From Octopus sinensis (lineage: Eukaryota), in the NCBI RefSeq assembly GCF_006345805.1, contig NW_021825689.1, positions 1-14,704 on the forward strand: a DNA stretch of 14,704 nt, in the 5' to 3' direction. The position numbers and the translations under genes were made by a program. Shown piece by piece: positions 8,356 through 10,446 of the stretch (position 1 is the stretch's first letter; every line of letters starts with the position of its first letter). The notes beneath the pieces are model-generated. The model was not told the DNA's origin, did not search any database, and saw only the letters and a list, made by a program, of their open reading frames with translations.

Positions 8356-8358
8356 ATG

Positions 8359-8389
<31 letters not shown>

Positions 8390-8414
8390 TAATAATAATA
8401 ATAATAATAATAAT
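8356..8414. repeat. (AAT)n array 1
   Basis: Read directly. Confidence 0.98.
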
Positions 8415-8879
8415 TTGTCTTGGTATAAAAGATGGGCTACAGCAAATATTCTGCTCAATACCACAGATTTGCTTGTTAGTTGTTTGACCTTAACCAGTTG
8501 AGCATGTCCCTTAGTGGCTGACGATATGTGCATCTCTGATCACGAGCAGAAGTACTGAGGGAGCCTCATAGCCATGTATTGAGAGGGATTCTTTGGGGTT
8601 TGAATAATTCACCTCTGGAAACATGGGTGTTTCGTTCAACGTCCTTAAACAATCCTTATTCAGGGACCTTTTGAGCGGGATGGGTTACTCGATCTGAAGA
8701 AAATTCTAACTGGGCTCCACCTGCAAGGTCATGTGCTGTTTATCTTGATATGAGATCACCATGTCGCGCACATATGGTTGTGATGCATGTGCCTGGTGTA
8801 CCCTTATCAGACGGGTATACTGGGCTTCGTATATTTTACCCCAGTATCACTTTGATGGCATGCTCTGCTTGCTCACTCA

Positions 8880-8880
<1 letters not shown>
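8415..8880. mobile_element. Unclassified interspersed element 'A', copy 1 (left end truncated relative to copy 2)
   Basis: About 95% identical by hand alignment to 9449-9925; lacks 13 bp (GTCATGATGGGTA) between GGGTA microhomologies; (AAT)n on both sides. Confidence 0.8.
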
Positions 8881-8881
<1 letters not shown>

Positions 8882-8944
<63 letters not shown>

Positions 8945-8958
8945 GTAATAATAATAAT
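8882..8958. repeat. (AAT)n array 2
   Basis: Read directly. Confidence 0.98.
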
Positions 8959-9301
8959 AGGGAAAGGGGCTGATTGCTACCTAACTCAGATACCAGGAAA
9001 CCCCAAAATGGCAGAAATTTAAAAGATAGTGCTCATGGGTTCCGCTCATATACTACGCAAAATACTTTCTATGTAATCTCAAGGTTTAAAACAAACAATT
9101 TTTATTTCATTTATTTTTTAAAATTTTATTTTATTTTTAAAATTATTTATTTATTAGACATTCACTAGTACAACACCAAAAAAACCCCAAATATATGGCA
9201 CACTTGGCACAACAACAACGTGAACTTCCAACCTGTTGTCTCTTGAGGTCTCTGGGTGAGACTTGGACCCAACTTGTACAAATATAAAGCAAAAGTCAAA
9301 C

Positions 9302-9303
<2 letters not shown>
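8959..9303 (+). mobile_element. 5'-truncated 3' end ('B', copy 1) of an R4/Dong-like RLE non-LTR retrotransposon: last ~38 codons, ~225-nt 3' UTR, then (AAT)n
   Basis: 8960-9076 translates as GKGADCYLTQIPGNPKMAEI*KIVLMGSAHILRKILSM*; this fits the R4/Dong-type ORF terminus (xQKxxLxGTAxILRKxL) as I recall it, with the Q codon mutated to TAA at 9020-9022. Confidence 0.78.
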
Positions 9304-9349
<46 letters not shown>

Positions 9350-9371
9350 TAATAATAATAATAATAATAAT
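9304..9371. repeat. (AAT)n array 3
   Basis: Read directly. Confidence 0.98.
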
Positions 9372-9925
9372 AGCACTGATGCAGTACCAGGCAGTGGCTC
9401 TCATGGCTTCTGATCTTAACTGATTGGAAGTGTTATCATGTACATTGTTTTGTCTTGGTATAAAAGATGGCCTACAGCAAATATTCTGCTCAATACCACA
9501 GATTTGCTTGTCAGTTGTTTGACCTAACCAGTTGAGCATGTCCCTTAGTGGCTGACGATATGTGCATCTCTGATCACGAGCAGAAGTAGTGGGGGAGCAT
9601 CATAGCCATGTGTTGAGAGGGATTCTTTGGGGTTTGAATAGTTCACCTCTGGAAACATGGGTGGTTCTTTCAACATCCTTAAACAACCCTTATTCAGGGA
9701 CCGTTTGAGCGGGATGGGCTACTCACCTGAAGAAAATTCTAACTGGGCCCCACTTGCAAGGTCATGTGCTGTTTATCTTGATATGAGATCACCATGTCGC
9801 GCACATATGGTTGTGATGCATGTGCCTGGTGTACCTTTATCAGACGGGTAGTCATGATGGGTATATTGGGCTTCGTATATTTTACCCCAGTGTCACTTTG
9901 ATGGCATGAACTGCTTTCTCACTCA
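9372..9925. mobile_element. Unclassified element 'A', copy 2 (longest, ~550 bp)
   Basis: Homologous to 8415-8880; its start (ATGCAGTACCAGGCAGTG) recurs at 10417; (AAT)n on both sides; no recognisable ORF or Pol III boxes found. Confidence 0.8.
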
Positions 9926-9942
9926 ATAATATAATAATAATA

Positions 9943-9982
<40 letters not shown>
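9926..9982. repeat. (AAT)n array 4
   Basis: Read directly. Confidence 0.98.
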
Positions 9983-9983
<1 letters not shown>

Positions 9984-10321
9984 GCGAAAGGGGCTGATTG
10001 CTACCTAACTCAGATACCAGGAAACCCCAAAATGGCAGAAATTTAAAAGATAGTGCTCATGGAAACTGCTCATATACTACACAAAATACTTTCTATGTAA
10101 TCTCAAGGTTTAAAACAAACAATTTTTTTATTTCATTTATTATTATTTTTTTAAAATTTAATTTTTTTATTTATTAGACATTCAGTAGTACAACACCACC
10201 CCCCCCCCAAATATATGGCACACTAGGCACAACAACAACGTGTACTTCCAACCTGTTGTATCTTGAGGTCTCTGGGTGAGACTTGGAGCCAACTTGTACA
10301 AATATAAAGCAAAAATCAAAC

Positions 10322-10323
<2 letters not shown>
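9983..10323 (+). mobile_element. R4/Dong-like 3' end ('B', copy 2)
   Basis: Coding part offset exactly 1024 bp from copy 1; KGADCYLTQIPGNPKMAEI*KIVLMETAHILHKILSM* (stops at 10044-10046 and 10098-10100). Confidence 0.78.
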
Positions 10324-10386
<63 letters not shown>

Positions 10387-10407
10387 GCAACAACAACAAT
10401 AATAATA
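10324..10407. repeat. (AAT)n array 5 with a short (AAC)n patch
   Basis: Read directly. Confidence 0.97.
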
Positions 10408-10446
10408 ATGACCTAATGCAGTACCAGGCAGTGACTCTCATGGCTT
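10408..10446. mobile_element. Element 'A', copy 3: first ~35 bp only
   Basis: ATGCAGTACCAGGCAGTGACTCTCATGGCTT matches ~9379-9409, then homology stops abruptly. Confidence 0.8.

What the first reader, a model, noticed from the sequence alone, without database searches (positions are those of the whole stretch)
8356..10446. Candidate composite microsatellite-targeted retroelement: [element A]-(AAT)n-[R4/Dong 3' end]-(AAT)n, repeated
Seen: the order is AAT-A(truncated)-AAT-B-AAT-A(full)-AAT-B-AAT-A(start), with ~1024-bp periodicity and roughly 5% divergence. Both B copies begin at the same point (GAAAGGGGCTGATTG) and share the same premature TAA, so they descend from one truncated template. Unit 1 is truncated at its left end inside A and abuts AAT directly, as expected for 5'-truncated target-primed reverse transcription of an A-(AAT)n-B RNA. 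Established: non-autonomous retroelements borrow LINE 3' ends, and Dong (R4 clade) inserts into (TAA)n. Inference: A+AAT+B may be one SVA-like composite mobilised by an RLE LINE and stacking inside AAT arrays. A simple local tandem duplication mediated by the AAT arrays is the main alternative.
Basis: partly seen in the sequence, partly recalled or inferred. Interest (0 to 1): 0.72.

Follow-up and report, generated by a model that had tools for sequence, protein, structure and literature searches.

The report
Duplicated stack of AAT-tailed octopus retroposons
This is a real 2-kb pile-up of two short mobile elements joined head-to-tail by AAT repeats in an octopus-type genome, most likely doubled by an ordinary local DNA duplication, not a new composite jumping element.

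Summary
The layout is AAT, A(pos 77-552), AAT, B, AAT, A(1-552), AAT, B, AAT, A(1-40), with a 1020-1046 bp period. The two units differ by about 4-5% in substitutions.

- A is a dispersed, about 552-nt, non-coding retroposon of octopus. About 58 kb of Octopus bimaculoides DNA held five more copies and one old fragment. One is full length with the same 5' end, three are 5'-truncated, and all end in their own (AAT)n tail.
- None of those copies is followed by B.
- B has the same tail. No clear B copy occurs in the ~71 kb sampled outside this locus. B has no protein or Pfam match, so "R4/Dong 3' end" is unverified.
- AAT targeting is well supported. Nine of 11 full-length 5' ends of A, B and the common octopus SINE directly abut three or more AAT units, against a background of 0.47%.

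Best reading: AAT-tailed non-autonomous retroposons inserted into each other's tails, and one A-AAT-B-AAT unit was then duplicated at the DNA level by unequal exchange between A copies or AAT arrays.

An SVA-like composite is not excluded, because no octopus genome could be searched. Interest is low to moderate.

The parts
8355..8414 (+). AAT1: (AAT)20 array with two AAT>GAT interruptions, between the unique left flank and the truncated A copy
   Evidence: TRF; unit print-out
8415..8878 (+). A': 5'-truncated copy of retroposon A (A positions 77-552), with a private 13-nt deletion
   Evidence: blastn; alignments
8879..8959 (+). AAT2: the (AAT)n tail of A', with one AGT interruption; it runs directly into B1
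8960..9303 (+). B1: 344-nt AAT-tailed element B. It has a short open frame, then an A/T-rich low-complexity stretch, then a small hairpin (GGUCUCU/AGACUU) about 45 nt before the tail
   Evidence: no protein or Pfam homolog
9304..9372 (+). AAT3: the tail of B1 and the upstream array of the full A copy, with one AAT>GAT interruption
9373..9924 (+). A: full-length 552-nt copy of retroposon A. It has the same 5' end as the full-length O. bimaculoides copy at L001 17894-17344
9925..9983 (+). AAT4: the tail of A, with two 'AT' phase shifts near its start; it runs directly into B2
9984..10323 (+). B2: second copy of B, with the same first base and the same last base as B1
10324..10409 (+). AAT5: the tail of B2, ending in a (CAA)4(TAA)3 variant
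10410..10449 (+). A head: the first 40 nt of a third A copy (about 92% identical to the full copy), then an abrupt switch to unrelated sequence
   Evidence: blastn; nhmmer. The right flank is not A-derived (15 of 300 shuffles score as well)

Best explanation
The locus is a stack of short, non-coding, (AAT)n-tailed non-LTR retroposons.

- Family A is about 552 nt and abundant.
- Family B is about 340 nt and rare.
- Both were inserted head-to-tail into one another's AAT tails. The inserting LINE machinery integrates at (TAA)n arrays. It is Dong-like by inference, and an RTE-type LINE with a microsatellite tail is also possible.
- After an A-AAT-B-AAT-A arrangement existed, one period of about 1.03 kb was duplicated at the DNA level. 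The likely mechanism is unequal homologous exchange or replication slippage, either between the two A copies flanking B or between the 60-86-nt AAT arrays.
- The units then diverged by about 4-5%, with patchy gene conversion.
- The right-hand A copy later lost everything beyond position 40.

Shown: the anatomy, the dispersed nature of A, the AAT association of 5' ends, and the absence of clear B copies in the sampled DNA outside this locus.

Inferred: the LINE partner, the order of events, and the DNA-level nature of the duplication.
For: (1) A is an independent family.
- The roughly 58 kb of non-N O. bimaculoides DNA in L001/L002 holds five copies.
- One is full length: L001 17894-17344, A positions 1-549, 90% identity.
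- Three are 5'-truncated at about positions 353, 405 and 505.
- There is also one old fragment.
- All copies that reach the 3' end have their own (AAT)n tail, and none is followed by B.

(2) B has no clear copy in the roughly 71 kb of non-N DNA sampled outside the finding (O. bimaculoides plus the rest of the window).
- The only other hit is a weak 3'-end-like match, L002 32637-32689, nhmmer E 5.8e-4.
- Two B copies 1 kb apart with identical ends are therefore far more likely to be one copy duplicated than two independent hits.

(3) A and B show similar divergence: 4.7% against 3.7-4.1% once the homopolymer block is set aside. That fits one event copying the whole unit.

(4) Both A tails in the window carry an 'AT' phase shift near the tail start, which none of the O. 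bimaculoides tails has. Both AAT-to-B junctions are in the same phase (...TAATAG|). So the internal arrays were copied together with the elements.

(5) The array starts and ends in A (three A, two B). Unequal exchange between two A copies flanking B produces exactly that.

(6) Divergence along A is patchy: 2/139, 15/169 and 6/154 substitutions in three blocks. The first 77 nt of B are identical. This fits gene conversion between tandem DNA repeats.

(7) Stacking on AAT arrays is general here.
- Nine of 11 full-length 5' ends of A, B and the common SINE abut three or more AAT units, against a background of 0.47%.
- The window holds SINE clusters, each in a single orientation, at 3038-3704, 4432-4763 and 6308-6585.
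Against: - No octopus genome could be searched, so absence of the A-AAT-B junction elsewhere rests on five A copies from one region of one species. That species may not be the window's species.
- The two window A copies are only modestly closer to each other (4.3% over positions 405-552) than to unrelated O. bimaculoides copies (6-7%). A alone does not prove duplication.
- The shared AAT>GAT interruption in AAT1 and AAT3 is weak evidence, because such interruptions are common in other A tails.
- The model needs extra events: loss of A3 beyond position 40, and either a 5'-truncated original A' or a 76-nt deletion.
- A simple exchange inside A predicts a two-block divergence pattern. The observed pattern is low-high-intermediate.
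Confidence: 0.6

Rival explanations
1. Composite retroelement. A read-through RNA A-(AAU)n-B-(AAU)n is itself a template for a TAA-specific LINE. The two units are separate target-primed insertions of that composite into AAT arrays, and unit 1 is 5'-truncated.
For: - Unit 1 ends inside A directly against an AAT array. Five-prime truncation is common in this family: three of five O. bimaculoides copies are truncated.
- Both B copies share their start, and the internal arrays look co-copied.
- All three families share only the (AAT)n tail at the 3' end, so any RNA ending in (AAU)n might be mobilised. This last point is inference.
Against: - None of five other A copies is followed by B. B shows no clear copy in the sampled DNA outside the locus, whereas a mobile composite would spread B at least as widely as itself.
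- A new copy landing next to its own source, among very many AAT arrays, is improbable unless the composite is abundant.
- The third A copy is truncated on its 3' side, which TPRT does not produce.
- No target-site duplication flanks the array.
Confidence: 0.13
2. No duplication at all. Five independent insertions (A', B, A, B, A3) of two active families landed in the same growing AAT-array hotspot. The identical B starts are simply B's natural 5' end.
For: - Head-to-tail stacking on AAT arrays is the rule in the sample.
- The window A copies are barely closer to each other than to unrelated copies.
- The central block of A differs by 8.9%, about as much as from the O. bimaculoides copy.
Against: - B has no clear copy in about 71 kb outside the locus, yet it appears twice within 1 kb.
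- Perfect alternation of three A and two B has a 1-in-10 chance.
- The tail phase shifts, the junction phase and the similar A and B divergences all point to common descent of whole units.
- The 140-nt and 77-nt blocks are nearly identical (2 differences in 216 compared positions).
Confidence: 0.15
3. Assembly artefact. One real unit was written twice, by haplotype duplication or misjoined reads in a microsatellite-rich region.
For: The locus is bounded and subdivided by long perfect AAT arrays, which are hard to assemble. No read data could be examined.
Against: - The units differ by 4-5% in substitutions and by a 13-nt indel, a 76-nt difference at the A start and different array lengths. That is much more than I would expect for allelic divergence (my judgement, not measured here) and not the pattern of a stutter.
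Confidence: 0.05

Closest known systems
Dong (R4-clade) LINEs that insert specifically into (TAA)n microsatellites (Bombyx Dong, DongAg, DongBg of the snail Biomphalaria), and elements they would mobilise in trans
   Same: - The elements end in (TAA/AAT)n.
- Full-length 5' ends sit directly on AAT arrays, and copies stack head-to-tail in the arrays.
- Dong's TAA specificity, including a mollusc member, is stated in PMC3812793.
- Dong-R4 LINEs are numerous in O. vulgaris (PMC13282606, Table 1).
   Different: - No reverse transcriptase or restriction-like endonuclease sequence is present.
- B's short open frame has no detectable homolog.
- A and B are short non-coding elements. The link to Dong is by behaviour only.
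SINEs and other non-autonomous non-LTR retroposons with microsatellite tails, such as RTE-mobilised SINEs. The octopus RTE LINE itself ends in a microsatellite (PMC9115989)
   Same: - A is dispersed and about 550 nt long.
- It has a discrete 5' end, a constant 3' end, frequent 5' truncation, a simple-repeat tail and no coding capacity.
   Different: - No tRNA, 5S, 7SL or snRNA-like head was detected.
- No 3'-end similarity to a LINE could be tested.
- A, B and the common SINE share no 3' sequence apart from the tail.
SVA-type composite retrotransposons of hominids
   Same: Modules of different origin are joined through a simple repeat, with the 3' module carrying the tail the LINE machinery uses.
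   Different: SVA is defined by thousands of dispersed copies that share the same internal junctions and have their own target-site duplications. Here the junction is seen only at this locus, and A circulates without B.
Tandem duplication by unequal homologous exchange between flanking repeats (TE- or microsatellite-mediated), the first step towards TE-derived satellites
   Same: - Two adjacent same-orientation units, with boundaries in repeated sequence.
- An n+1 pattern of the flanking repeat: three A and two B.
- Similar divergence of both modules, with patchy near-identity suggesting gene conversion.
   Different: - Only two units are present.
- The ancestral single-unit state was not observed.
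- The divergence pattern does not reveal a crossover point.

Membership tests
Dong/R4-clade LINE (B as its 3' end) | Encodes a reverse transcriptase with a C-terminal restriction-like endonuclease, or is demonstrably the 3' end of such an ORF | tested here: not met
   The six-frame B query found no protein at E<=10 among 5.8 billion, and there is no Pfam domain. The open frame is only about 21 + 17 codons. A peptide this short has little power, so this is absence of evidence.
Dong/R4-clade LINE (B as its 3' end) | (TAA)n 3' tail and insertion inside (TAA)n arrays | tested here: met
   Both B copies have AAT arrays directly on both sides. This feature is not exclusive to Dong.
Dong/R4-clade LINE (B as its 3' end) | Nucleotide similarity of the 3' UTR to a classified Dong/R4 consensus | not testable with these tools
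   No eukaryotic repeat library or octopus genome is searchable. Metagenome, GTDB and IMG/VR scans contain no octopus DNA.
SINE / non-autonomous non-LTR retroposon (A) | Dispersed multicopy element with a constant 3' end, a simple-repeat tail and variable 5' truncation | tested here: met
   Five further copies and one old fragment in about 58 kb of O. bimaculoides DNA. One is full length and three are 5'-truncated, all with (AAT)n tails.
SINE / non-autonomous non-LTR retroposon (A) | Pol III-type head derived from tRNA, 5S, 7SL or an snRNA | tested here: not met
   ARAGORN found none. Rfam found none at the gathering or the E-value threshold; the only hits were low-complexity artefacts on the AAT arrays.
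SINE / non-autonomous non-LTR retroposon (A) | 3' end shared with a partner LINE | not testable with these tools
   No octopus LINE sequence was obtainable.
SVA-like composite retrotransposon (A-AAT-B as one unit) | The same internal junctions recur at unlinked loci with different flanks | tested here: not met
   None of five other A copies is followed by B, and there is no clear B copy in about 71 kb outside the locus. The sample is small and comes from one chromosome region of O. bimaculoides.
SVA-like composite retrotransposon (A-AAT-B as one unit) | Each copy is bounded as a TPRT product: intact 3' end, 5' truncation only, target-site duplication | tested here: inconclusive
   Unit 1 fits, being 5'-truncated against AAT. 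The third A copy is 3'-truncated. Target-site duplications cannot be seen inside AAT arrays, and none flanks the whole array.
SVA-like composite retrotransposon (A-AAT-B as one unit) | Transcripts spanning the whole composite | not testable with these tools
   No RNA data are available.
Local tandem duplication by unequal homologous exchange | Adjacent same-orientation units with boundaries in repeated sequence, and all modules similarly diverged | tested here: met
   Period 1020-1046 nt. A differs by 4.7% and B by 3.7-4.1% excluding one block. Boundaries lie in A copies or AAT arrays.
Local tandem duplication by unequal homologous exchange | A single-unit state at the orthologous locus in another haplotype or species | not testable with these tools
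   The source assembly and its relatives cannot be queried by position.

The most novel reading that the evidence does not exclude
A-(AAT)n-B is a genuine new composite non-autonomous retroelement of octopus. It was born by read-through of A's tail into a neighbouring B and is mobilised as a unit by a (TAA)n-specific LINE, so that copies pile up inside AAT arrays. This locus would then show two such insertions. A related reading is that it is the seed of a TE-derived 1.03-kb satellite.
Probability: 0.1. Interest if true: 0.6.

Novelty: new member of a known kind. Interest (0 to 1): 0.3.

Why it matters
The locus is a clear small example of how microsatellite-tailed retroposons in octopus genomes insert into each other's AAT tails. 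The resulting stacks then become substrates for unequal exchange. This is relevant to how TE-derived tandem repeats arise.

It also bears on repeat annotation. De novo repeat builders could fuse A, the array and B into a false chimeric consensus.

The AAT association of three different families suggests that a TAA-targeting LINE, Dong-like or RTE-like, drives much of the short-retroposon load in octopus. That can be tested genome-wide.

The locus itself does not change current understanding.

Tried and rejected
(1) Protein route to a LINE identity for B.
- A six-frame B query against 5.8 billion proteins found nothing at E<=10.
- Pfam on the A and B frames found nothing.

(2) Protein route to more copies of A.
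- The six-frame A query gave a single hit. It is an antisense A fragment forming the first 36 residues of a 2015 O. bimaculoides gene model.
- The RefSeq model lacks that fragment, so it is an annotation artefact. It did give access to L001 and L002.

(3) Getting more octopus DNA.
- A SINE-derived peptide query gave one UniRef-only protein, which is not on record.
- The representative search with that protein returned only non-cephalopod molluscs and arthropods.
- P0001 is not on record.

(4) Exact-pattern scans of metagenome, GTDB and IMG/VR collections for A and B were all empty.
- The abundant A is absent too, so these collections hold no octopus DNA and the B negative there means nothing.

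(5) A full-text search for A and B k-mers in papers found none.

(6) A tRNA or other RNA-family head for A or B was not found.

(7) The right flank as a diverged A body or an internally deleted A was rejected. The best local alignment is matched by 15 of 300 shuffles.

(8) A target-site duplication around the whole array was not found. Only a non-adjacent 9-mer (GATGCATTA) is shared by the flanks, and I treat it as chance.

(9) The shared AAT>GAT interruption in AAT1 and AAT3 was downgraded as proof of DNA-level duplication, because such interruptions are common in other A tails.

(10) A conserved 3' hairpin in B is present in both copies and, with one compensatory pair, in the weak L002 match. 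Folding energies are not better than shuffles, so it remains only a lead.
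Full report
**What is there**

From 8355 to 10449 the + strand reads:

- AAT1: 8355-8414.
- A': 8415-8878, equal to positions 77-552 of A.
- AAT2: 8879-8959.
- B1: 8960-9303.
- AAT3: 9304-9372.
- A: 9373-9924, 552 nt.
- AAT4: 9925-9983.
- B2: 9984-10323.
- AAT5: 10324-10409.
- The first 40 nt of a third A: 10410-10449.
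- Unrelated sequence follows.

Start-to-start spacing of the matching blocks is 1020-1046 nt.

Substitution divergence between the units is as follows:

- A: 22/465, or 4.7%.
- 5' part of B: 5/134.
- 3' part of B: 12/151, of which six are one A-run to C-run block.

Both B copies begin and end at the same bases.

**Where the window comes from**

The window is extremely rich in microsatellites. It carries many copies of a short repeat that I recognise from memory as the common octopus SINE.

The only protein hit for a six-frame translation of A was an Octopus bimaculoides gene model. Its first 36 residues are antisense A. The RefSeq model of that gene lacks them, so that is an annotation artefact.

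The hit gave access to two overlapping pieces of O. bimaculoides chromosome CM046623.1: L001 at 33 kb and L002 at 48 kb. Together they hold about 58 kb of non-N, non-redundant sequence. Several repeat families of the window recur there at 70-93% identity.

The window is therefore octopus or a close relative. The exact species is not established.

**What A is**

In that small sample A occurs five more times, plus one old fragment.

- A full-length copy lies at L001 17894-17344 (A positions 1-549, 90% identity). It starts at the same nucleotides as the window copy and is preceded by GATAATAATAAA.
- Three 5'-truncated copies start at about positions 353, 405 and 505.
- A 77%-identical fragment also occurs.

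Every copy that reaches the 3' end stops at ...CTCTCACTC followed by its own (AAT)n tail.

A has no long open frame, no Pfam domain, no tRNA-like head and no Rfam match.

A is thus a dispersed, discrete, non-coding non-LTR retroposon with a microsatellite tail. It is SINE-like in behaviour, but no recognisable pol III head was found.

None of these five copies is followed by B. Two tails run straight into the 5' end of the common SINE. The others run into sequence unrelated to B.

**What B is**

B has the same kind of tail. In about 71 kb outside the finding (the rest of the window plus L001/L002), blastn finds no B. nhmmer finds only one weak match to B's last 60 nt, at L002 32637-32689 (E 5.8e-4). 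That match is followed by a trinucleotide tail.

At about 21 + 17 codons it is too short to be significant. It has no homolog at E<=10 among 5.8 billion proteins and no Pfam match.

"R4/Dong 3' end" is therefore unverified. The peptide is too short for the negative result to count against it.

A small hairpin lies about 45 nt before the tail in both copies. With one compensatory pair it also occurs in the weak L002 match. Its folding energy is no better than that of shuffled sequence.

**AAT arrays as targets**

I listed every AAT array and every full-length 5' end of A (3), B (2) and the common SINE (6) in the window and the two loci.

- Nine of the 11 5' ends directly abut three or more AAT units.
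- The other two abut the degenerate AAT-like tail of an upstream SINE.
- Only 0.47% of positions in the same DNA have such a neighbour.
- The 11 ends are not fully independent, but the excess is overwhelming.

The window also holds SINE clusters, each in a single orientation: four copies at 3038-3704, two at 4432-4763 and two on the other strand at 6308-6585.

Established knowledge fits this picture. Dong elements, including DongBg of a snail, insert into (TAA)n (PMC3812793, citing Kojima & Fujiwara 2004 and Xiong & Eickbush 1993). Dong-R4 LINEs are numerous and apparently young in O. vulgaris (PMC13282606, Table 1).

The octopus RTE LINE also ends in a microsatellite (PMC9115989). The partner LINE therefore remains open.

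**Why two units**

Three readings compete.

*Independent stacking of five insertions* is made plausible by the general stacking. It is also helped by the fact that the two window A copies (4.3% apart over positions 405-552) are only a little closer than unrelated O. bimaculoides copies (6-7%). Several things argue against it:

- B, which has no clear copy anywhere else in the sample, occurs twice within 1 kb.
- The alternation of A and B is perfect.
- A and B show similar divergence.
- Both A tails here share an 'AT' phase shift that the O. bimaculoides tails lack.
- Both AAT-to-B junctions are in the same phase.

So whole A-AAT-B units share descent.

*Whether the copying went through RNA (the composite idea) or DNA* cannot be settled without a genome search. 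DNA is favoured for four reasons.

- A circulates without B.
- A retro-copy landing beside its own source would be a coincidence unless the composite were abundant.
- The third A copy is truncated on its 3' side, which TPRT does not do.
- The pattern of three A and two B is what unequal exchange between two A copies flanking one B produces.

Divergence is also patchy. It is 1.4%, 8.9% and 3.9% in three blocks of A (my chi-square from those counts gives P about 0.01). The first 77 nt of B are identical. This suggests gene conversion between tandem DNA repeats.

The shared AAT>GAT interruption in AAT1 and AAT3 would favour DNA-level copying of the upstream array. Such interruptions are common in other tails, so I give it little weight.

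**What remains unexplained**

- Why the third A stops at position 40. It could be a deletion, or an insertion larger than the 4.2 kb of window that remains.
- The low-high-intermediate divergence pattern in A.
- The identity of the LINE that moves A, B and the common SINE.

**Limits**

- No octopus genome, repeat library or read set could be searched.
- Pattern scans of the metagenome, GTDB and IMG/VR collections were empty even for the abundant A. They contain no octopus DNA.
- The sample used to judge linkage of A and B is one chromosome region of one species.

**Verdict**

The structure is real. Its elements are AAT-tailed, AAT-targeting non-autonomous retroposons. The two-unit repeat is most likely an ordinary local duplication of a retroposon stack (confidence about 0.6). 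An SVA-like composite keeps about 0.1.

Interest is low to moderate. The general AAT-array targeting by several octopus retroposon families is the more useful lead.

Noticed in passing
window 3038-3704 (+), 4432-4763 (+), 6308-6585 (-): Copies of the common octopus SINE sit in clusters, each in a single orientation (four, two and two copies). The copies I inspected are joined by short AAT-like or (TAC)n tails. The first SINE ends ...CGCCTT followed by GATAATGATAATAATAAT, so this family also carries an AAT-type tail.
   Followed up: partly
L001 9748-9700 (-), L002 5164-5210 (+), L001 19139-19100 (-), L001 ~18890-18840 (-): In O. bimaculoides the 5' end of the common SINE (CCTTYC.ACTATAGGCACAAGGCCTG) lies directly after an (AAT)n array in every full-length case seen. 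Two of those arrays are tails of A copies. This suggests that the SINE, A and B use the same AAT-targeting machinery.
   Followed up: partly
window 11593-11818 (+) and 14309-14617 (-); L001 12364-12531: Another dispersed repeat family occurs as an inverted pair about 2.5 kb apart in the window. It matches L001 at 81-87% identity. Its ORF-like translations resemble each other (…EQD(S/T)L(S/F)HV(A/R)PV…FKGASL…). It was not classified.
   Followed up: no
window 4800-6000: A 1.2-kb purine-rich (GA/GAA/GGA) low-complexity tract with GC skew up to +0.9 and many overlapping 15-57-nt tandem periods. Long mechanical ORFs on both strands here are artefacts of the composition.
   Followed up: no
L001 17344-17894 (-), protein P0001 (UniRef A0A0L8FVA6): The 2015 O. 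bimaculoides gene model for a sushi/EGF protein starts with 36 residues translated from antisense A. The RefSeq model (XP_014786617.2) has a different N-terminus, so this looks like a repeat-derived annotation artefact.
   Followed up: yes
window 9179-9184 vs 10199-10204: The two B copies differ by a block change of a homopolymer (CACCAAAAAAACCCC against CACCACCCCCCCCCC). This is six adjacent A>C differences, which look like one event or a sequencing or assembly error in a homopolymer.
   Followed up: no
L002 32430-32560 (-): A tRNA-like SINE (…GGCCCAGTGGTTAGGGCAGTGGACTCGCGGTCATAGATCGCGGTTTCGATTCCCAGACCGGGCG… on the minus strand) lies just upstream of the weak B-like 3' end. It is a different family from A, B and the common SINE.
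   Followed up: no
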